This document shows positions 1,793 to 50,708 of a stretch of DNA of 64,000 bases, one piece after another (the first letter of the stretch is position 1; the number at the start of each line of letters is the position of its first letter). This DNA is from Bigelowiella natans CCMP2755 (taxonomy: Eukaryota > Protista > Cercozoa), in assembly GCA_000320545.1 (NCBI GenBank), contig ADNK01001665.1:23578-87577 (forward strand). Reading direction: 5' to 3'. The translations under genes and the position numbers were made by a program. A model generated the notes under the pieces. The model did no database searches. It was not told the DNA's origin and saw only the letters and a list, made by a program, of their open reading frames with translations.

Positions 1793-2361
1793 CTGGCTTG
1801 CTTTCAGCTTTACATTACTGTAATTGGATGAGCTAGTGAGTATCGGGAAAATGCAATCATTTCATTACATCCATCTCACTCACCTGCATCACTCGCACAC
1901 ATTTGATCTAGTTGTTGCCCGACATAGCATGGATGCTTTTACATGCATGTAGTACATAATAGCAGAAATCAACAAATGCAATATAAGCACTGTAGCTGCT
2001 TTGCATAGCTACTGGACTATTAAAAAAAAAAAATAATGTCATTACATCCGTCTCATATTTGTTGCCCGCCGTGTTATTATGTATTGCTAGCATGCAATTC
2101 TAAACACATGTTCACCAAGCTATGAATAAAGGCTGCAAATGTTCTCGATGCTAGCTATAACAAACATACAAGCATTACCATTATTGCATCAGCAAAATTG
2201 CAAATAATTTTGCAAGACTGCTCATTCTGTGGTGGTATTTTTTTTTTTGTGTTTACCACCACATATTAACAGCTGCACTAAATGCGCTTATTTGCATTGT
2301 GCGACCCTACTGCCACTTGAGAGAAGTAGAGGTTATTGAGAGGAGGACTGCCGCAAGATGC

Positions 2362-4429
2362 TTAAAGTTTAATCATTTGGAACCGCTCATACGCGGCCAA
2401 TTTTACCGAAACCTTTTCTTTCTTCTTCGATGACTTTTCCCCATTTTCCTTGGACTCATCAGCAGCATCTTCATCCTTGTTCGAGCTCAGATTTTTATCC
2501 TCTTCCAGCTCATATGCGCCCCAAGCACACTCCGCAGTATCATACGCAACAGTCCCATTACCTATCAATGTGATCATTGAATCAAATCAAAACAAATCTG
2601 AATTATCACGGCATCCCACATGAAATAGTAGCAAGCATATTGGCACATCCAGGCTGTGAGACGATAAAGACGAATACCCACCTACAAATTCTCTTACAGC
2701 AGCGTCAACACCGTCCCCGTGGGTAACTAGGAGCACTCGATCATTGCACCGTACGCAATGCCGACGAAACAAAGCTCTCATCGCAGACATCATGCGAACC
2801 TGCGCCGGAAATCACGAAGTATTGGCATTTATTGCAAATCGAAATCAGCCAACTGTATGGCTTCATTCTATGAAGATATCAGCAATTCTTTTGCGTTGCA
2901 AACTATGTAGATTCAAACTAATCACTACTGCGTCTCAACGTGAGGGGGTCAGCATTACCTTCCCGTTTCTGTCGTTTTCTGAGGGCTCAGGGTCAACACC
3001 GAGAGCTTTCTCTCCCTCATTTTTTGGCTTCTCCTCTGAACCAACATGGCAGCGCCAAACGTTTTTTACAGACAAGATTCTCCGGAGTTGTATTGTTTTA
3101 TATCGGTGCCATGGGGGTGATCGGCAGTCATCATGGTTGATTTTTATCAGATGCTTAGTTTGCTAACACGCTGTCTTCTTGTCGAGGATTTGTTATAACC
3201 TGGCTCGATTTTGGTGATGAAGCCGTCGGAAAACTCTTTCAAAATCGATTCCATTGAGTCTTTGCTCAAATATTCAACCTAAGATTCGATGAAGGGCAGC
3301 ATGTCATATCATGATTTTCCATAACACGCATCATCTGCACGTCGCTACCGGTTTATGAACATCACCTTGCCGTCCGCTTTGTCCGGTCCCCAAACCGCTT
3401 TCTGTATTTTTCGCACGCATCTGCGCACCTGACCATCCCAAATTGGAGCACGGTGGATAAAACACACACACAATGTTCTCGAGAACAGCGGAAGATCTAG
3501 TCTACTGGAATTCGTCATTAACACGAACGTTGTGGATGCACCTCTCCAATGGATTTGTTAACTCTCAGCCTCGATACACCTAAATCGTGTTGAATTAAAT
3601 TTTATGTTTTGTGCTCTGCAGCGCCATCTTTGTGGAAAATAAGATGTATGTTTTTTTATCCCGCCTCTCTCGTATTCAACTCCTTCAAGTAATGAAGTTG
3701 TTATTACCTAGATGTTTCGCAATAAGAGCTGCTGTCTGGAGGCATCGCGTGTAAGGGGAACACACTATTAAGTCAAACCCTCCATATCCTTTCTTCTTCA
3801 TCACGTCAGCCTAAGAGAAGAGCAGTAAGCTTCACGATACTCACCCTTTCCCATACGTCAGATGAATACCAAATGCCATTTTACACTGTCATTGAAACCT
3901 GGTCAATGGGAAGCTTCTTATCACAGATTGGGGAGTCATATGGGCGCTCATTCTAAGCATACGGGAATAGATATGTGAAGGATATGTGTCACAAAGTGCG
4001 TAAATATAGAAAATGGAAGAGAGGGGGAGGACAGGGGGGAGATGATAAAGAGAGGGAGACAAGTGGGTTCGGGGGAAGGGAAGCGAAAGGGCGAGATCCT
4101 TCTATATGGTTCACTACCCGTCCGGGCCATGTGGCTTTCTTGTCATTGTCCTGTAAAATGTTACATGGATAGAGTCAGCACAGGGAGAGATGTATACATT
4201 GTTTCAAGTGGAGACCACGCTTGTCCATGAGATTCATCGGTGTTATTATTACCAGTCTCACTGAGTGTCGAATCACCACCATGTATCCTTTCTTTCGGAT
4301 GTCTACTCAACACATATGAGTGATCGGAATTCGAAGCCCAATAATAAAATCGATGGATTTCCCAACAGGCAAGATCGAATCGAGTTAAGTGACGAGACCT
4401 GCTTTCCCAGCAGGGGACGCGGTAGCCAT
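2362..4429 (-). CDS. Histidine phosphatase / phosphoglycerate mutase-family protein, multi-exon
   Basis: Spliced reading MATASPAGKA|DIRKKGYMVVIRHSVRL|DNDKKATWPGR|NERPYDS...; IVCSPYTRCLQTA at ~3715-3765; RVLLVTHGDGV at ~2710-2740. These match the RHxxR, SPxxRxxQTA and VTHG motifs. Confidence 0.85.
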
Positions 4430-4686
4430 CGTGGCTTCCCCGGGATAGTCTCCCGAGATTCCTCCCTGGACTTGAGCTTCTTGTTGAAGTAGAAATGCAA
4501 TTGAATTATCACCTGCGACAACAATTATTTCAAACCGCTTAGCATTCGACAACTCGCTGCAGGTCAGTTCCACGTGGATGGCTCGGAAAGAGAGGAGAGC
4601 GCGAGAGAGCGAGGGGTGGGGGAATGCGCAGTTCTTCAACCTATTGGGAATCACTTGTGTGCTTGTGTTTTTTTTTGTTCTAAGTG
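4430..4686. promoter_or_regulatory. Compact (~260 bp) putative bidirectional promoter between the histidine phosphatase and COQ5
   Basis: Head-to-head start codons at 4429(-) and 4687(+). Confidence 0.5.
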
Positions 4687-7313
<2,627 letters not shown>

Positions 7314-8116
7314 GTGAACGAAAGAGTTGTGTGCCATTGAAAGATAATGCGCTATTCTTTAACCTTATCGCAAAATTCCCATACGCTCAGTCGTTTCGTC
7401 TTGCTTCTTTCATGAAGCTATGAGTCTGTGCGTTGTGAATTCTAGAATTAGGTTTCACATCATAATGCTGATCGTATTCAGTGACTCCTGCAGCATAAGA
7501 TTAAGCTGTATTGTATATTCTTGTATGATATCACGAAGATCATCCTGAATGACATTCACGAATTACCATTTACATAATATTAATGCTGTTTGGATATATC
7601 CCCATCCAGTAGTGTGTTCCTCTGGGTTTCACAGTCATGAAAAAATCAGATTTAGCATACGCATAGCTATTGGTAATTTTGTTCGAACGAATGTACCGGA
7701 GAATTAGTTCGTCTGCGTGGACATGCTGTAGCATGCATTGCACACATGCAATAATTAGCAGTATCGATAACACCCGCCCGCATATAATCCTCCCCCGATC
7801 CGCTTCACACGTGCGAGCCAGCAGCATGTAACAGAGACTTATCTCTGGATTGTGGATCGAACGTACCACGCTAATATGAAATGTTTGTAAGTCTGGCGAG
7901 TGAGACTGTGTGTGTGTGTGTGTGTGTGCGCGCGCGCGCGCGCGCATTGCAGGGAGCATATCCTCAAAAGCATATTTTAGATCACACGTGAACAATATGC
8001 TATGTGCATATGATGAAGATGATAGTATGCAACGATAAAGACATTGTCAGGCAAGGCAATTATTAGGCTATCCCACACTTGACGGACCTACGATTACTAC
8101 AATGCATGCAGCGCAC

Positions 8117-9383
8117 TTACAATGTTATAAACACAAATTTGATACTTTCTAAATATTCCTCTATGATGTACGAAATTTATTGATCAAAGCATGGCGAAAT
8201 GTACGATTTCTCATATTATTTCTTTACTCTTTCTGCATATCCATATTTCGCGGAAAATTGAACGTCTGCTTGAAGTGGCTACCTTCTTAGTGTCCTGTTT
8301 TTCTATAATCTAATTCTAAACTTCAAGAGCTACTGACCATTTTCAAACTCTGGTCCTTTGATAAGGGAATCGGCTTTTGCAATTGCTTTTGGAAAGAAGA
8401 CTCGATGAAGCACACGAGCACATCCGACTCATCATCTCCAATTTTCTTGCTGCTCTTTTGACATGTAATCTTTTGTTAGAGATTTCAGTACCTGAAATCA
8501 TGGTTTATGATAACATTACATTTCGGTGTATATCCTAGACAACACACTGCACAGAAAATGCAGCCAATGTGCGAATATGCTAGATTGCCAACCTCAGGGC
8601 CAGCAGCAACATGAATTCGAAGCTGGTTTCTTTTCTTCCGCTCCAATGATCTCCGGACATCTCTTACAGTTGTGAATTAAAAAAGGGCAAGTTCTATGAT
8701 GCTAACAATGAATAGAGTACGATTCGTAAGCTGGTGGCACGTAGTACCTGTAAAAAGAATCCTCAGAGTCGTGGTCGCTGATCTCAGCTCCGTGGCCTGC
8801 TGTAGTGAAGCTGATCAAGTTGATGCTACAAATAGCTGGAAAAGTCAAGATGACGACCTTTCAATTGACCACCCAAAAGTAAATCTTCAATGGGTACAGT
8901 CTTGGTCGAGTTTCCTCTCGGCTTTGCACGTCCCTCTTGCCTTGAATCCTTCTGTTTGTTTAAGATCAAGATGATGATGTGATGTGGAGCTTTAACTACT
9001 TATCAGAGTGTATCAACCTTAAATGGCTTCCGCTTGACTTTTATCCTTCTCTTGACTCCAGCGGCTGAATACTTGGCCTGTCGCCTAATGGTATGATACC
9101 AATATTAAACTCGGTACCGTGTATGATGTATGACAGTGTTACCTGTTGCTGGTAGGATTCTTCTTTCCTCGCCTGGATTTCATTTCAATAGCTTCCTAAT
9201 CAATTCGATGATTTCATCAGGAATCGTTCTGGCTGATGTATTGATCGATTGATCAACTAGTTTCACCACCTCGGAATCGTTAAATCCGAATTGAGAAGTG
9301 AGTAGAATTTGAAGGACAATCAAAGCAGAGACTAGAGTCGCACCGGAGCGATAACGTAGAGATCTACCCCAGCATCTCCACAT
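8117..9383 (-). CDS. Hypothetical protein with an N-terminal hydrophobic segment followed by basic exons; 3' end uncertain
   Basis: MWRCWGRSLRYRSGATLVSALIVLQILLTSQF, then GT-AG-bounded segments (e.g. EAIEMKSRRGKKNP, VKRRIKVKRKPFK). No recognisable domain. Confidence 0.4.
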
Positions 9384-43335: not shown

Positions 43336-44918
43336 TTAGACTCTTCGTCTTTTTGGGTGGCTTACCAAAGGAGAACTTTGGTACTGCTGTGAGCTCTGTT
43401 TTTTTGATCTCTTGCTATTATATCCTGACACGTTGGTCGATTTGGAAGTGGAAGTAGAAGATGATGATGACAATGGTGCAACATTCCGGGATGCGTTCTT
43501 CGTCGTAACGACGTTAGTTCTTTTAGATTCTGACGAAGTAGCGTTCATCATCCTTGTTGGACTTTTTATTGGCGGCCGAGAGGAAATCGGTTGTCTACTA
43601 CTTTTGGGGCTGGTAGGGGCGGAAAGCACGCCCTCAAAACGAGGAGGAAGCATCTCGATACTTCTACGATGTGGCACCGCATTACCTCCTCCTCCTCCTC
43701 CTCCTCCTCCTCCTCTTTGCTGCTGCTGCTGCTGCTGCTTTGCTTCTGTCTCCATTCCATCTTCCATAGAGATGTAGTCAAACCTTCCCATATAACCAAG
43801 ATAAATGCTGCACTTTTTCCTGATTCTGCCTTTAAATATCGAGGGAGCCATGATAATTTTCTCTCCTTTTGGAAATACTATAATGATTCTCAATTGGAGG
43901 AACATCGCTGCCATTTGCAAGTCAATGTGATCTAGATGACCATTCCGATGTCGTCTCGCTCTTACTTCGATTCCATAAATATTAGCAGTTGCTCTTTTAG
44001 CTACGTTCTCGTACCTAGATATTAGTTCGTCATATTTCCATTTAATATACTTTCGTAACCTTCGAGATGCGTCTTGGGAGGCCGGATCTAAATCATCAAA
44101 ATACTCGTGGAAGTGCTTGGGTGCCTTTGTCGCCATTTGGTGGAGGATGCCTTGCACCGCACATTCATTCAAGTTGCTGGTGTAAGCTTTTAAATGTTTT
44201 TGTAAATTCTCAGCCCTATAAATCCATCACCAGAGAGGAAAAGGTGGAGGAGGAGGCGGGGGGGAGAGAGAGAAAGAGATAGAGAGAGAGATAGGTACAA
44301 ACGTCAATATTTTCATGAAGAAGATGATGAATGGTGCATCCTGTGTAAGTATGGCGGTTGTTGTTCGTTTTTGTTCTCTACATCTTTCATCATTATTATC
44401 ATCATTATCATCATTATCATCATCATCATCATCATTATCATAATCATCATGATACTACTGACTGGTCACTGAGGCATCTTCTCTGAAAGCTCTTTCCAGG
44501 AAGCGGATTCATTTCTTGTTGATTCACGCAATACTCCACATACATCTTATACTGTACAATTCTTATAATCGGCATATCCAGTGAATTAATGATCTGTAGA
44601 AAAGTCTTGATTTCCCCTCTTCCTCCTCCTCCTCCTCCTCCTCCTGATGCTGCTGGTGGTGCTCCTCTTTTCTGTTGAGACCTGCTGCTGCTGCTGCTGC
44701 TACGTCTAGGTGAATGCGGGCTAGGTATAGAGACATCATCATGTGTAGCATAAAGAGACGGGGAAGGAAGAGGAGGAGGGAAATGAAGATTTTGATGATG
44801 ATGAAGCAGCTGATGATGATCATTGTAATCACCTACTGCTGCTACATTTTGCGAAGAAGAATATATCACAGGCTGCCATTCCCCCTTATGTAGAGCTAAT
44901 ACCCAAAATCTATTGTTC

Positions 44919-44952
<34 letters not shown>

Positions 44953-47628
44953 CATCGGTATTTTCCCGGCTATTTTGCTGTGATATAGTAGTAGTAACTG
45001 CTGCTGGTGACAACGCCACAAGCTTAGAGGAAGAAGAAGAACCAGTAGGAAGAGGATCACTCGTCGTCTAAAGGTGATATTATAAAATAAATAAGCAAAC
45101 AACTTAAATCATTAACAACGTCAACAAATAACTAAATCTATTGGAAAACGAAAGGACTCTGTTGAGAATCATTATAAATTGTGTATCAAGATAGCCTCCT
45201 TGACAATGAAGAAAAGTAACAAAAGGGAAAAAAAGACAACAACCAAATTATCAATGGCGTTTGATACCAATACAATGAAGATATTATATATGAATATGAT
45301 TACCGGAAATACAAGAAGGATTCTAGTCCCAGTGTAATTGGCGATGATTTGACAGGTCGCAAGGTCCATTTTGAGTCGATTTACAGCTGCAGCTACAGAT
45401 AATTGCTGAGTATTCCTACTGCTGCTGCTGCTGGTGGTGGTGGTAAATCTACTATCAGCGAGGGCGGATGACAGAAATGTCTTCTCAGTCAACTCAAACT
45501 GATGCAAAGGTGCTGCTGCTGTTGAAGTAGTGGAGGGAGATATGCTGCTTTCAGCATTATTATTTGGCAAATCACCTCCACCTCCACCACCACCACCACC
45601 ACCAGTAGTAGCTGCTATGGGAGGAGAAGGAGAAGGAGGAGGAGGAGGACTCTCACAATATTGGCGAAGGAGAACGCAACTCATGATTGCTCCTATAAAA
45701 TCCTTTTCTTCCTCCTCTGAAATCGTCACTATCGTTGTATCTCCACAGTGGTGGTCATGTTTCTTGTTCTTGTCCTCCTCCTCCGTTTTGTTGTTCTTCG
45801 TATGTTTCTTCTCCCTCTTCAGATATAGGGAAGCGAGTGCACGATACAAGCTATTACTACTTCTTCTTTTCATCATACTCTGGCTTTGAGTTGGTTTCTT
45901 TTCTTCTCTGATAATCCACCTACTGTGAGACTTAAATGTGAGATCACACATTCTTCTTCTGTCGTAAAGTGCTAAACTATTATGTAAATTGTTCTCTAGA
46001 ATAAGCTTAGATGGTCGTGATGACATTGTGTACTCGATGTACTGCTGATCTCGTTTTGGTGAAAGAAATAGTCGTCCTGCCCTCCAACCTCTCTGTCCTC
46101 CTCCTCCTCCTCCTCCTCCTCCTCCTCCTCCTCTTCCTCCGTGCACTGTTATTATTGTTTCCCGACGCAGATCTTTCCATATTTTCCTAGGAGGTTCTTC
46201 TTCTTCTTCTTTTGATCATTATCATTGTGATTATCAGCTAGAACCCCGTGCTGCACTCCACCAATCTTCTTGTCAAAGTCAGCTTTGTTGTCCATCGATA
46301 CGCTCAGCGATTTGATCACGTGGTGGATCACAGGTTCAATCTTTAGGATCCTTTGCCGTATTTTTTGAATAAATGCACGCGACACAGAACGATTGTTATC
46401 AATCAACCGGCAAAAACCGCGTAGATGTTGGCTGTATGGCCCACTTGGAGCTTGCAGGATTTTAGGAAGCTTCGTCTTTCTCCACCGTGTGTGCAGTCTC
46501 TGCACCAGAAGATCTGGGAATCCGTCAAATTTCTTGCTGATCTGCTCCAAGAATTCTCCTCGGATTTTGAATTCATCACCTCTTCTCTTGATTTCATCAC
46601 TTCTCCTTTCAGCGGAAATCTCCCGAAGCTTTCCGATAAATCTTTGCATATGCTGTTGGAGAGAGAGCACAATGTCATTCTTCATCACAATTTTTATTTC
46701 CCGGGCTAAAGAGAGTTTGGAGACGCAGAGTTTTTCAGTCCTGCCATCAATATCAGCAAGAAGGGATCCTGTGCCCCCTCCTCCTCCTCTTCTCCCACCT
46801 CTCAATCCTCCCTTGATGCCACCACGCTTACCACGAATGGGCTCACAGCAGTAGTCTCTAAAGAGTTTGGTAAGCGTTTCGGAGAACCCCTTTTCCCTGG
46901 TCTTCTGCAATCCTCCTCCTCCTCCTCCTCCTCCTCCTTTCTTGTGGTAACTACTACTACTACTACGATGTTGGCGGGTGGTGGTGTGTCTACTAAACAA
47001 ATTCTTAAGACTCTCTTCCACGCGGTCCCTTACAACATCAATGAGCAGTTGCTTCAGATCATCGCCTTGTTTTGTCCTAAATCTTTCGATAGTCACACCC
47101 AAGCTTGAGACAAACTTGTCGTCAGCAATCTGTAGTAAAGGTCCTAAGGCAACTTGAAGCTCTTTCCCATACACGTTTGTGCTGTAGAATATTCGTTGCC
47201 CGTAGTCATTGAAGCATTTTACCAGTCTATCCCTCACACCCTTCCTCTTTTTCTCTCCAAACCGCTGCCAGGCTGCTCGCACAATCTGCAGCACGTCATC
47301 GGTGTAGAAAAACTGCTCATGAGCTTCCCTGGACGCGACCATGCTTGGATGACTCGCAATGGCACGATACACAGCCTCTACGTTGAGTTTGCCCTGAAGG
47401 CAATCCTTGACTGTGTTGTTAACTTCGGTGGGAAGATCGATTTCAATTGAGGCGTCAGTCTCCGTATTGTGATCTAGTCCTGCACGTAGTAGCGACTTCA
47501 ACTTTCGGATCATTCCACCAAATTGGTTTTTGAGGTAAGCTGCCTGTGAGAAGCCTCCAAGCATCTTCATCAGGTCACGTCCATTGCTGCGTATCCTCGC
47601 AACAAGAAATTCCTCCAAGCGATTATCA

Positions 47629-47662
<34 letters not shown>

Positions 47663-48094
47663 TAGCATTATTCCTCCTCCTCTCAGGTGTAGTACCAAAT
47701 AATGTAAGGGGGTTGTTCTCCGTTATAGCAGTTCTTAGGGTTGATGCAAGGTACGGTCGACACAGGGCAAACATGAAGTGATCATCAAACATCTGCTCAC
47801 GTTGCTGCTTAGATAAAGAGCATCGTCTTAGATCGTCCACGATCTTCGCCTTGGCGTCCTTAATCATGCTCTTCTCCGCAACCTTGTCACTCTGCATTGC
47901 GGTCGCCAGCTGTGGCAACAGGTTGTTGTTGTGATTATCCTCCTTAGACTCCCTTATATGCTTCGGTGTCTTGAGATCAGACTTCTCTCGACAGCCGAGA
48001 ATGCTGAGATGTGTATCACCGTGCAACCAGCTTTGCAGTACATGGTTGCGAAAAACCTCCAGAACAGACTTACTGTTGGACAGGTTCTTGTGCC

Positions 48095-48128
<34 letters not shown>

Positions 48129-48544
48129 GTAGGTGTCATCATCATCATATGTACTACTACATCAAGAAGAAGAAGAAGAAGAAGAAGAAGAAGAAGAGGA
48201 AGAGAAAAGGGAGGGGGAGGGAAGGAGAGGTGCTCTTTGTACCCAAGACAAAGCACAACATTTGTTGCATTCTGAAGAGAAGCAATGAGCTGCTCGTTCT
48301 TGAAGGGATCGGTCTCATTACATCCTGGTGGATCAACTATGCGAGTTGACTCTAACACGGCACAGGGGGCATAAATATGCAGCGATTTGGCAAGTGAATT
48401 CACTACTGGTTGTCGGAGTATTTCGAAGATGCGATCTCGCACATGAACACGGTCGGAGACGATATCACCACCCTTTCCAAGCACAACGTACACATTTCCA
48501 AGCTCAGCCTCCACCTTTGGGTCGAATTTCACACCCCCCGACTG

Positions 48545-48576
<32 letters not shown>

Positions 48577-50586
48577 GTGAGTATGAGGATGGGAGATACG
48601 TATCCTCATCGTCGTAAATGTCATCCTCTTCCACCCCAGTAACCATGGAGAGGAGTTTCACCATGTAGAGCCGGCGCTCGTCCTGCTCCTTCTCAAGCAA
48701 CCCAGCACGCCATTTCTCCAGCTGGCCTTTCCAATCGTACTGCGTCAAAAGGGTCTCCACCTCGGTCTTATTTGATACGATGAGCACAGCATGGTACAAC
48801 GAAGAGAAAGAGAACACTGTTTTGAGGGAGGTGACAGAACCAGAAGCGTCACTATGCTTAACCAAGAAAGGGATCTGCGGCTTCATATTGTTATCTCCAG
48901 AGTAGAAGCGAAGCATCCTCTGCACCTCCTCTCTCTCGGCTGCTAAAACCCTGGTCTCCTTCAAAATGTTGTTCTCATTGAATCGCTTCTGTGCAACACT
49001 CCTCGCCTGCTCGAAGTGCTTGTCCACAAGAGCATGTGCATCATCCTGTACATTCTTGGCGTTGTTCCTCTTCATTCGGTTGCGTTTTCGTTTTCGATTA
49101 TTGTTAGTTCCTTTTCTTCTATTGGTATTGTGATGAAGCATGGCCTCTTCCAGCATCATCAGTTCTCCAGGTAAAACATCATCTATGGGTTTATTGTCGG
49201 GTCGATTTGCCTTCTGATACCACTCTTTAGAGTACTCCGAAGTACGAAGAGCTTGGTCAAGTGCAAAGCTTTTCCCTATACGGCTCTCTCCAAGAAGTAC
49301 GACCTCGTTTTGATGCTGCTTGAAGCCCTTCAAAAGCTCGGTAAAGTCTATCGACACTGACCTGTGATGAATGATTACATGGAAGGGGATGAGGGCGAAG
49401 AAGTCTTATTATTAAACACATTATTCCCATATTTTACGTAGACTAGAGATGGGATGAGGAGAGGGATGATGAGAAAGAGTCTCTTGTAATAGTACACCTT
49501 ATGTCAGATGTTAGCTTCTGCTGGAGGGGTCCATGAGCTAGCGCCTTGCTCGCCCCAATGGATACGATTAGCTTTAACTCGGTCTGTAAATGGTTGAGTA
49601 TCTCGGGCAAAGGCTTCTGAGTTACATCTTCTTGCGTTAGTGACTCTTCTTCCTCGGAATACTCATCCTCAAACTTCTCCTCAGCCTCGATCGTTTTTAG
49701 TTTTTGAACGAATGGAAGAAGATACATGTTATATGCTGTTCGAGTTGTTCCGCGCTTAAGATTGGATTTTGGGTAACCTCGTCTGAACTTCTTAGTGATT
49801 TCTGTCCAATCAGCATCAGAGAGCTCCCGGCCCCAGATTCCATGTGTCTTACTAGTGGTTCTTCTGTTGTTCGAGTTCCTTGCTTTCTCTACGATCTTAT
49901 GGAGCTTGAACCAGTCCCAGGGTTTCTTCATATGTCTCTTGCTGTATTAGTTTTAGTAGTAGTAAGTAGGTTTCATATTCAAATGAGTCGCATCCTTAAA
50001 AGCCCAACTACTATTCATCATGAGATAATATTGTGTAGTAGATACAGCGACGGTAGGGAGAAGTCATTAGTCAGACGCACCCATTCACAACAACAACAAC
50101 AATAGCAACAGAACTACATAATAATATCATCGAGATATCACTAATCCTCCCCAGTTACTACTACAACTACTTTTTCAGCCTTCGAATACGTTCGTTGGAT
50201 TCCTCATGGAACTCTTCCAACTGCGACAAGAACATCCCTTTCTCATCACCCTCTTGTTGTTGGTATTTTCTTCTATCTGGATTATTCTCATCATCTTTAT
50301 CTTGCTCCTCATCCGACACTAGATTCACGATGTCCCTCTACAAAGATGGTTAGTTGTACTGATCGTGATGGTAATGGTGGTCGTCGGTGGTAGAAATAGT
50401 AGTGGTAACAATCGATCAAAGGAAGTTCCTGTGATAGTGAAGAAAGGCAGGTGAATTGGTTATTACCTTAACGTCGTCGGAAGATTCTGTATCACTTTCA
50501 GTTTCTTCGCATACTTGCTTCACGTGCATTCTCGGGTGTTCCGACTTGGGAGATCTCGGTCCGTCCTGAGAGTGGTTCTTTTCATT

Positions 50587-50669
<83 letters not shown>

Positions 50670-50708
50670 CTTTTCAGACATTCTTCGCCTTTTCTTATGT
50701 CTTTTCAT
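43336..50708 (-). CDS. Large predicted nuclear protein: ARID + dynamin-like (NUGGC/SLIP-GC-like) GTPase + helical region + two OTU-like domains
   Basis: MKRHKKRRR N-terminus; ARID-like FLSQLEEFHEE...KPWDWFKLHKIV...WTEITKKF...AYNMYLLPF; P-loop LLGESRIGKS; LHIYAPCAVLESTRIVDPPG; GCREKSD; OTU-like SNSLYRALA and NECAVQGI...IDLQMAAMFLQLRIIIV...IYLGYMGRFDY; C-terminal PKRRRV. Confidence 0.7.

What the first reader, a model, noticed from the sequence alone, without database searches (positions are those of the whole stretch)
43336..50708. ARID + NUGGC-like dynamin GTPase + tandem OTU-like domains in one predicted nuclear protein
Seen after manual splicing: basic NLS-like ends (MKRHKKRRR; PKRRRV), a SIM-like DIVNLVSDEE, an ARID-like DNA-binding domain (~49500-50250), a GTPase with G1 GESRIGKS, G3 VDPPG and G4-like EKSD (~47980-49360), a long helical stalk, then two OTU-like folds. 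Established: NUGGC/SLIP-GC proteins are nuclear dynamin-like GTPases; ARID binds DNA; OTU is a deubiquitinase fold. I know of no protein with this combination. Inference: a chromatin-associated, oligomerising GTPase coupled to ubiquitin/SUMO signalling, possibly in nuclear defence.
Basis: partly seen in the sequence, partly recalled or inferred. Interest (0 to 1): 0.8.

Follow-up and report, generated by a model that had tools for sequence, protein, structure and literature searches.

The report
DNA-tethered dynamin-like GTPase, doubtful OTUs
This is one expressed gene of the alga Bigelowiella natans for a roughly 2,000-residue protein that joins a DNA-binding ARID domain to a very divergent dynamin-type GTPase; relatives in other protists carry ubiquitin-protease (OTU) domains, but the two "OTU-like" domains claimed in this protein could not be confirmed.

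Summary
The locus is a real, expressed, seven-exon minus-strand gene. The genome is Bigelowiella natans, and the public model Bigna1/76062 is this gene's first 1,334 residues.

- **Transcript:** Spliced RNA contigs from three studies join the ARID exon to the P-loop exon and exon 5 to exon 6. They also carry one extra base at 46181. That base removes the stop ending the public model and adds about 680 residues.
- **ARID:** confirmed. Pfam gives 27.9 bits against a cut-off of 24.1.
- **GTPase:** confirmed as dynamin superfamily by fold only (Foldseek E 4e-6, Z 16.2 to SynDLP). Pfam Dynamin_N and DUF7605 do not hit, so closeness to NUGGC is suggestive at best.
- **G4:** the "EKSD" motif sits at the right place in the fold but is not conserved among relatives.
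- **OTU:** no profile method supports it. Pfam gives nothing, hhalign gives E about 0.2, and a custom HMM scores no better than shuffles. The fold prediction failed (pLDDT 44). Only a language-model look-alike search (0.92) favours OTU, and only for the last exon. The presumed catalytic residues look degenerate.
- **New here:** the GTPase belongs to an unannotated protist family. Its members are fused to ARID, homeodomain, canonical OTU or PIN domains, and one B. natans paralogue has a canonical OTU.

Verdict: partly supported; a new variant of a known kind.

The parts
43336..50708 (-). Whole gene, about 2,017 codons. Exons: E1 50708-50670 and 50565-50467; E2 50337-50171; E3 49941-49498; E4 49361-48243; E5 48093-45304 (with one extra base at 46181 in RNA); E6 45067-44553 (or to 44463); E7 44215-43339; stop 43338-43336.
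   Evidence: Public model P0001 = jgi/Bigna1/76062 matches E2-E5a at 100%. Splice sites were read.
50305..50334 (-). DIVNLVSDEE, which fits a SUMO-interaction motif pattern (hydrophobic core plus an acidic/Ser tail). It is a short motif only.
   Evidence: Sequence; not testable here.
49710..50238 (-). ARID/BRIGHT DNA-binding domain (P0001 residues 145-244), split by intron 50170-49942.
   Evidence: Pfam PF01388 on P0001: E 3.3e-6, 27.9 bits against a gathering cut-off of 24.1, profile 3-88 of 89. Exon 3 alone gives E 0.0028.
47976..49361 (-). Dynamin-superfamily G domain. G1 GESRIGKS is at 49268-49291. A basic low-complexity insert (NNRKRKRNRMKRNN) is at 49061-49102. The switch-I candidate FLVKHSDASGSVTS is at 48827-48868. 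G3 VDPPG is at 48323-48337. Intron 48242-48094 follows. The strand ending in REKSD (G4 position) is at 47976-47990.
   Evidence: AF2 model of P0001:320-800 with 19 homologues: pLDDT 69.6, core 85-93. Foldseek: SynDLP E 4.2e-6, and all top hits are dynamin-like. VIA: Z 16.2. Atlas: all hits are Dynamin_N clusters.
46155..47975 (-). Long, mostly helical region after the G domain (the presumed stalk), with N-, G- and K-rich runs. The family-conserved segment extends about 200 residues past G3.
   Evidence: Local alignment of homologues. Language-model leads to DUF7605, Dynamin_N and DLP_helical at 0.84-0.87, which count as leads only. Not folded.
46181..46185 (-). A-run that is one base longer in RNA than in the assembly. 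With the extra base the frame runs on from the stalk into 46179-45304, so the public model's stop at 46152-46154 is false.
   Evidence: 'Put in behind 46181: T' in the contigs of all three runs X1, X3 and X8; sequence.
44861..45861 (-). First OTU-like candidate, split by intron 45303-45068. SSNSLYRALAS (45829-45861) has Ser where OTU has Cys. MDLATCQIIANYTGTRILLVFP is at 45304-45369. RFWVLALHKGEWQPVIY is at 44861-44911. Long G/S/T/N runs lie between them.
   Evidence: Motif resemblance only. Pfam gives nothing. hhalign aligns only the Cys box, E 0.25. Custom OTU HMM against shuffles: p about 0.16 for E5b and 0.02 for E6.
43765..44215 (-). Second OTU-like candidate. NLNECAVQGILHQM (44134-44175) has a Cys at the start of a predicted helix. 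LDHIDLQMAAMFLQLRIIIVFP is at 43870-43935. SIYLGYMGRFDYISM (43765-43809) has Arg-Phe where OTU has His-Tyr.
   Evidence: ESM Atlas features: OTU clusters at 0.92 with 180 shared features. Pfam OTU gives nothing; VG15 gives E 0.009. hhalign E 0.22-0.24. HMM against shuffles p about 0.19. AF2 pLDDT 44.5. Foldseek gives nothing. Weak similarity to the first candidate, E 0.012.
43339..43764 (-). Low-complexity Q/G/S/T/K-rich tail ending in PKRRRV (43339-43356), an SV40-type basic cluster.
   Evidence: Translation.

Best explanation
One gene encodes a protein of about 2,017 residues. It belongs to an undescribed, very divergent branch of the dynamin superfamily found patchily in protists. From the N terminus it has: an acidic stretch with a SIM-like motif; an ARID domain; a G domain with intact G1 (GxxxxGKS), a conserved switch-I Thr region and G3 (DxxG), plus about 300 residues of mostly helical or low-complexity insertion between G1 and G3; a long helical region; then about 680 residues of low-complexity linkers around two small modules that may be degenerate OTU remnants; and a C-terminal basic cluster. 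Inferred mechanism: ARID and the basic clusters place the protein on nuclear DNA or chromatin. Nucleotide binding and hydrolysis then drive G-domain dimerisation and stalk-mediated assembly, as in other dynamin-like proteins. The C-terminal modules lack a complete Cys/His pair, so they would at most bind ubiquitin-like proteins rather than cleave them. Shown here: gene structure and expression, ARID, and the dynamin-type fold. Inferred: localisation, oligomerisation, and any ubiquitin link.
For: Spliced RNA contigs join ARID to the P-loop exon and exon 5 to exon 6, and they repair the frame at 46181. P0001 is Bigna1/76062 and is 100% identical to exons 2-5a. ARID scores above Pfam's cut-off. 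Dynamin fold: Foldseek E 4e-6, VIA Z 16.2, and only dynamin-like proteins among the top 48 rows. Atlas neighbours are all Dynamin_N clusters, and the best (TM 0.51) is a Dynamin_N+DUF7605 cluster. At least 14 of 26 relatives give sub-threshold Dynamin_N hits. Relatives carry ARID (P0026, E 1.3e-7), homeodomain (P0010), OTU (P0003, P0007/P0028) and PIN (P0003). A B. natans paralogue on contig C2529 has a canonical OTU (DGNC...HYDS) upstream of G1, G2 and G3 exons on the same strand. ESM features place the last exon with OTU clusters.
Against: No Pfam Dynamin_N or DUF7605 hit on this protein or contig. A profile of the family finds only P-loops in PDB sequences. The family has no conserved N/TKxD, so guanine specificity is unproven. 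The stalk was not folded, and single-sequence search finds no relative for it. OTU has no profile or fold support. The exon 6 to exon 7 joint and the 5' end were not seen in reads. No contig spans the whole gene, because contigs break at codon repeats.
Confidence: 0.65

Rival explanations
1. One reading: the C-terminal third holds two genuine OTU folds, and the protein couples GTPase-driven assembly on chromatin to deubiquitination or deSUMOylation.
For: ESM features for the last exon give OTU clusters at 0.92 with 180 shared features. Three OTU-like motifs occur in the canonical order in both modules, and the middle motifs resemble each other (E 0.012). Canonical OTU domains are fused to relatives of this GTPase in three separate cases.
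Against: Pfam OTU gives nothing even at E 10. hhalign E is 0.2-0.25, with only the Cys box aligned. A custom OTU HMM scores no better than shuffles. AF2 pLDDT is 44.5 and Foldseek finds no match. The aligned catalytic positions are Ser in module 1 and Arg-Phe for His-Tyr in module 2, so activity is unlikely even if the fold is right.
Confidence: 0.15
2. The C-terminal 680 residues have no relation to OTU. They are a lineage-specific, largely disordered low-complexity tail with small domains of unknown kind, and the motif resemblance is chance.
For: All profile and fold tests were negative or inconclusive. No relative of exons 5b, 6 or 7 was found among the family's proteins, in B. natans or in metagenomes. 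Much of the region is homopolymer runs.
Against: The language-model hit to OTU clusters has a shared-feature count (180) typical of true family members. The predicted helix starts at the Cys, and a helix followed by three strands occupies the right place (low confidence). OTU recurs as a partner of this GTPase family.
Confidence: 0.35
3. The assembly is right at 46181. The protein then ends at 46155 as in the public 1,334-residue model, and the downstream exons are untranslated or belong to another gene.
For: The public gene model stops there. No single contig bridges 46088-46145 in the rows shown.
Against: Contigs of three independent studies all carry the extra base, which opens the frame for a further 292 codons up to a verified GT..AG intron that is itself in frame with the next exon. 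Depth is similar on both sides. Exon 7 has no start codon ahead of its conserved-looking Cys box.
Confidence: 0.07

Closest known systems
Bacterial and organellar dynamin-like proteins with solved structures (SynDLP 9em9/7zw6, Campylobacter DLP1/2 5owv/5oxf, Fzo1/mitofusin, BDLP, IniA)
   Same: Extended G-domain fold. VIA gives Z 16.2 with 244 residues aligned to the SynDLP minimal G domain, and Z 10-12.7 to the others. The G1 and G3 motifs are present, and the strand-helix-strand after G3 ends at the G4 position.
   Different: Sequence identity is only 11-19%. There is no Pfam Dynamin_N hit. About 300 residues are inserted between G1 and G3. No N/TKxD is conserved. No membrane-binding paddle or transmembrane part is evident; instead there are a DNA-binding ARID and basic nuclear-type clusters.
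NUGGC / SLIP-GC nuclear GTPase family (Pfam Dynamin_N + DUF7605)
   Same: Nearest predicted-structure clusters include 'Nuclear GTPase SLIP-GC-like' (TM 0.46-0.48) and a fungal Dynamin_N+DUF7605 cluster (TM 0.51, the best by query). Language-model leads for the stalk exon point to DUF7605 (0.86-0.87). [quoted passage not shown]
   Different: Pfam DUF7605 and Dynamin_N do not hit this protein. The TM margin over bacterial Dynamin_N clusters (0.42-0.46) is small. I found no record of NUGGC proteins carrying ARID or OTU (literature searches found none).
ARID/BRIGHT chromatin proteins (ARID1-5, JARID, Dead ringer)
   Same: The ARID domain is recognised over nearly the whole Pfam profile and above the gathering score.
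   Different: No solved ARID is close in sequence (no hit at E 1). None of the usual partner domains (JmjC, PHD, BAF250_C) is present; the partner here is a dynamin-type GTPase.
OTU deubiquitinases (PF02338)
   Same: Motif order is Cys box, then helix plus strand ('E.E..A.A...I.V'), then a terminal strand, in two modules. ESM features support the second module. Relatives of this GTPase family carry canonical OTUs.
   Different: No profile or fold support in this protein. The catalytic Cys is replaced by Ser in module 1, and His appears replaced in both. Long low-complexity inserts lie inside module 1.

Membership tests
Dynamin superfamily (large GTPases) | G1 P-loop GxxxxGK[ST] | tested here: met
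   GESRIGKS at 49268-49291. It is conserved as G....GKS in most relatives.
Dynamin superfamily (large GTPases) | G3 DxxG after a hydrophobic strand | tested here: met
   VDPPG at 48323-48337. P and G are invariant in 20 family members.
Dynamin superfamily (large GTPases) | G4 [NT]KxD giving guanine specificity | tested here: inconclusive
   REKSD ends the strand at the G4 position. The family alignment shows no conserved NKxD there, so nucleotide specificity is open.
Dynamin superfamily (large GTPases) | Extended G-domain fold matching solved dynamin-like proteins | tested here: met
   Foldseek E 4.2e-6, prob 1.0. VIA Z 16.2 with 244 aligned, and dynamin-like proteins fill the top 48 rows.
Dynamin superfamily (large GTPases) | Pfam Dynamin_N (PF00350) at the gathering score | tested here: not met
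   No hit on P0001, on the exons, or on this contig. At least 14 relatives score E 1e-5 to 0.24, all below the cut-off of 27 bits.
Dynamin superfamily (large GTPases) | Helical stalk/bundle, nucleotide-dependent oligomerisation, stimulated hydrolysis | not testable with these tools
There are only language-model leads. The biochemistry needs the bench.
NUGGC / SLIP-GC family | Pfam DUF7605 (PF24564) after Dynamin_N | tested here: not met
   No hit at E 10 on the stalk exon, on P0001, or anywhere in the genome scan.
NUGGC / SLIP-GC family | Closer in structure to SLIP-GC-type than to other dynamin-like clusters | tested here: inconclusive
   Best TM is 0.51 for a Dynamin_N+DUF7605 cluster, against 0.42-0.49 for the others. 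The margin is small.
ARID/BRIGHT | Pfam PF01388 at the gathering score over the full domain | tested here: met
   27.9 bits against 24.1, E 3.3e-6, profile 3-88 of 89, P0001 residues 145-244.
ARID/BRIGHT | DNA binding | not testable with these tools
   Needs EMSA or ChIP.
OTU cysteine proteases | Pfam PF02338 or profile-profile match | tested here: not met
   No Pfam hit at E 10. This contig is absent from the genome's OTU hits. hhalign E 0.22-0.25. HMM against shuffles p 0.16-0.19.
OTU cysteine proteases | Catalytic Cys (DGNC box) and His (HY box) | tested here: not met
   By eye and by the hhalign register: module 1 has SSNSLY (Ser) and no His in register. Module 2 has NLNEC (Cys) but GRFDY where relatives have HYD. 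The alignments are weak, so this is provisional.
OTU cysteine proteases | OTU fold | tested here: inconclusive
   AF2 single-sequence model of exon 7 residues 1-150 has pLDDT 44.5, and no Foldseek match reaches E 0.001. ESM features favour OTU at 0.92. Module 1 could not be folded because an intron splits it.

The most novel reading that the evidence does not exclude
This gene represents an unrecognised eukaryotic family of nuclear dynamin-superfamily NTPases built on a modular plan. A swappable DNA-binding head (ARID, homeodomain) tethers an oligomerising NTPase to DNA. Swappable effector modules (OTU protease, PIN nuclease) act on ubiquitin-like marks or nucleic acids. That would make it a chromatin-based surveillance or defence system of protists, analogous in logic to immune NTPases and possibly related to vertebrate NUGGC.
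Probability: 0.2. Interest if true: 0.8.

Novelty: new variant of a known kind. Interest (0 to 1): 0.55.

Why it matters
Dynamin-like proteins are known as membrane remodellers. The nuclear member NUGGC/SLIP-GC is poorly understood. A family in which a dynamin-type G domain is repeatedly fused to DNA-binding domains (ARID, homeodomain) and to OTU or PIN modules points to a DNA- or chromatin-directed role for this fold, and it offers tractable domain combinations to test that. The result also corrects a public gene model: Bigna1/76062 is cut short by a one-base assembly difference. It further shows that Pfam misses the whole family.

Tried and rejected
- **Word searches:** the word-index protein search with exon 4, with exon 5a and with P0001 (region 120-1334) found nothing but P0001 itself. 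This is due to the tool's length window and the family's divergence.
- **PDB by sequence:** the G-domain exon, exon 7, the ARID region and the family profile gave only chance or P-loop hits.
- **Other libraries:** NCBIfam gave nothing.
- **Relatives of exon 7:** the own-genome search found only low-complexity matches. The metagenome scan found none.
- **OTU by profile:** hhalign against 3- and 7-sequence OTU profiles and a custom HMM with 500 shuffles were not significant. One hhalign run used a wrong flag and one script timed out.
- **OTU by fold:** I chose an unbiased single-sequence AF2 run of exon 7 rather than seeding it with true OTU rows, which would have been circular. It gave a low-confidence model and no fold match.
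- **Family tree:** deep nodes are unresolved, so it says nothing on one or several origins of the ARID or OTU fusions.
- **Literature:** searches for this architecture, DUF7605, or B. natans dynamin/OTU/ARID found nothing relevant.
- **Rejected:** an acceptor at 48086 for exon 5. The family alignment and read depth favour 48093 with the donor at 48243.
Full report
**Organism and public model**

I confirmed this. The only strong hit of the exhaustive protein search is P0001, listed by EukProt as Bigelowiella natans, jgi/Bigna1/76062, 1,334 aa. Exons 2, 3, 4 and 5a of the window match it over their full lengths.

**What I left out**

The first 1,334 residues were studied through the public protein id. 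Everything downstream was searched exon by exon, by window reference. So the full model of about 2,017 residues was never searched or folded as a whole. The first OTU-like candidate is split by an intron and could not be tested in one piece.

**Gene structure and expression**

I laid reads on 44100-50099, which is the 6,000-letter limit, so the 5' 600 bases and the last 760 bases were not covered. Contigs of three runs from three studies behave as RNA.
- Depth is zero in 45100-45299 in all three runs, with 40-190 on the flanks.
- Two joints have GT..AG ends on the minus strand.
- The first joint, 49361|49498 after the stated shift, links the ARID exon to the P-loop exon in frame (LTSDI-R-SVSIDF, as in P0001).
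- The second joint, 45067|45304, links exon 5 to exon 6 in phase 0.
- Contigs break at homopolymer-codon runs, so none spans the gene. Depths are similar throughout (X1: 46-78).

All three runs also carry one more base behind 46181, which makes an A-run of five rather than four on the coding strand. With it, the frame that the assembly closes at 46155 runs on through 46179-45304. The public model therefore looks truncated by about 680 residues.

Three junctions are less secure.
- **Exon 4 to exon 5 (48243|48093):** taken from the public model. It is supported by conservation of the VVLCLG-HKNL strand in relatives and by read depth.
- **Exon 6 to exon 7:** inferred. Rows at repeats were dropped. 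Donors at 44553 and 44463 (and two others) are in phase with the acceptor at 44215. Residual depth in 44300-44499 slightly favours 44463.
- **The MKRHKKRRR start:** it needs the (GA)n repeat spliced out (50669-50566), as in the public model. I could not check this. The public model's further upstream exon looks doubtful.

**ARID**

Exon 3 alone gives a weak partial ARID hit (E 0.003-0.005). The public spliced protein gives PF01388 at E 3.3e-6 and 27.9 bits, above the cut-off of 24.1, over profile positions 3-88 of 89. No solved ARID structure is close in sequence.

**GTPase**

Pfam finds no Dynamin_N or other GTPase family on the exons or on P0001. Genome-wide scans with PF00350 and PF24564 do not touch this contig.

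The exhaustive search with exon 4 found 26 proteins at E up to 1e-3.
- One is a B. natans paralogue (P0006).
- Others come from Norrisiella sphaerica, Stephanoeca diplocostata and Copromyxa protea.
- The rest are environmental sequences.

Their alignment shows the following conserved features:
- a conserved G....GKS;
- an 'LLP...STT' switch-I-like segment;
- a 'DRVYIR' segment;
- 'APC..L....VD.PG..D.DP' (G3);
- a following strand-helix-strand.

The long G1-G3 spacing (about 200-300 residues) is a family trait. At least 14 of the 26 relatives give sub-threshold Dynamin_N hits.

An AF2 model of P0001:320-800 built with this alignment has mean pLDDT 69.6, with the core at 85-93.
- **Foldseek against PDB:** only dynamin-like proteins at the top, led by SynDLP (E 4.2e-6).
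- **VIA-align:** Z 16.2 with 244 aligned to the SynDLP G domain; Z 10-12.7 to Campylobacter DLP, Fzo1, mitofusins, Vps1, BDLP, IniA, Drp1, MxA and dynamin.
- **ESM Atlas fold search:** only Dynamin_N clusters. The best by query (TM 0.51) is a fungal Dynamin_N+DUF7605 cluster, and two 'nuclear GTPase SLIP-GC-like' clusters score 0.46-0.48.
- **Language-model search on the stalk exon:** DUF7605 first, at 0.87, which is below the tool's trust level.

Dynamin superfamily is therefore solid. NUGGC-likeness is a reasonable but unproven placement.

The family has no conserved NKxD there, so I would not assume guanine specificity.

**OTU in this protein**

- **Pfam:** no OTU on any C-terminal exon, even at E 10. 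The genome's nine OTU matches do not include this contig.
- **hhalign:** against OTU profiles built from relatives and from B. natans OTU genes, only the Cys-box segments align (NECAVQGILHQ and SSNSLYRALAS), at E 0.22-0.25.
- **Custom OTU HMM:** scores are matched or beaten by 95 of 500 shuffles for exon 7, 78 of 500 for exon 5b and 10 of 500 for exon 6.
- **AF2 on exon 7 residues 1-150 alone:** pLDDT 44.5 and no fold match. The predicted pattern does fit an OTU: a helix starting at the Cys, then later a helix and three strands.

In favour of OTU:
- The ESM feature search places exon 7 residues 1-150 with OTU clusters at 0.92 with 180 shared features. By the tool's own calibration, that count is typical of true members.
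- The middle motifs of the two modules resemble each other (E 0.012).

If these are OTU folds they look inactive. Module 1 has Ser for the Cys and no His in register. Module 2 has the Cys, but Arg-Phe-Asp where canonical relatives have His-Tyr-Asp. My estimates are 0.6 that module 2 has an OTU-type fold, 0.3-0.35 for module 1, and 0.15 that either is an active protease.

**Family context (new here)**

Relatives of this GTPase carry other domains.
- P0003: canonical OTU (E 3.7e-6) plus a PIN domain, C-terminal to the GTPase.
- P0007/P0028: canonical OTU (E 5e-10), N-terminal.
- P0026: ARID (E 1.3e-7), N-terminal.
- P0010: a homeodomain.
- Norrisiella P0022: a faint ARID (E 0.21).

In B. natans itself a third family member lies on contig C2529. 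An ORF there has an OTU domain (E 4e-4, with DGNCMF...HYDS). On the same strand, within 3 kb, follow exons with G1 (GTNGVGKST), the LLP...T segment, DRVFIR, and a 1,157-codon exon starting at the G3 motif. That exon is 31% identical to P0001 (E 2e-9).

So OTU and DNA-binding domains are recurrent partners of this G domain. A tree of the G domains is unresolved at depth.

**Function**

Expression, ARID and the dynamin fold are shown. The rest is inference:
- nuclear location (PKRRRV, other basic runs, ARID);
- nucleotide-driven assembly on DNA;
- a ubiquitin-related role;
- the defence idea, which rests only on the modular, patchy, paralogue-rich character of the family.

NUGGC itself is cited as a nuclear GTPase that enhances genome stability in B cells (PMC12107551).

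**Verdict**

The gene is real and more interesting as a family than as a single protein. It is a new variant of a known kind. Interest is 0.55.

Noticed in passing
window 46181-46185: The assembly has a four-base A-run where RNA contigs of three studies have five. This creates the stop that ends the public model Bigna1/76062 at 1,334 aa. It is probably an assembly error and may not be the only one in this genome.
   Followed up: partly
L018 (G000:C2529:11000-20999), minus strand 2214-8541: A third B. natans member of this GTPase family. It has a canonical OTU domain (DGNCMF...HYDS) in an upstream ORF, then G1, G2 and DRVFIR exons, and a 1,157-codon exon beginning at the G3 motif. It is very likely one OTU-GTPase gene.
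   Followed up: partly
G000:C3234:107883-114271 (L014-L017): Paralogue P0006 (Bigna1/86186, 1,675 aa). Its closest relatives are Norrisiella P0022, which shows a faint ARID hit, and the environmental protein P0009. No G....GKS P-loop was found in P0006 or P0009 by pattern.
   Followed up: no
window 49339-49507: In run X8 only, the contig joins 49339 to 49507. That differs by 31 bases from the canonical joint and has GT..AG on the plus strand. It would break the frame. It may be an assembly artefact (31 is the k-mer size) or a non-productive or antisense splice.
   Followed up: no
window 50590-50668: A long (GA)n microsatellite lies in what the public model treats as the first intron. If it is retained, the MKRHKKRRR start is out of frame, and the first in-frame AUG would be at MHVKQ (about 50531).
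   Followed up: partly
L010 (G000:C2461:67790-68269) and L011 (G000:C3248:153842-154345): Two B. natans OTU domains have a helical insert of about 100 residues between the Cys box and the rest of the domain. They sit inside open frames of 892 and 593 codons. The rest of these proteins was not examined.
   Followed up: no
window 43339-44214 (exon 7, residues 23-88): Sub-threshold Pfam hit to VG15 (PF25310), E 0.009 and 16.6 bits against a cut-off of 26. It covers the region just after the Cys box. Its meaning is unknown.
   Followed up: no
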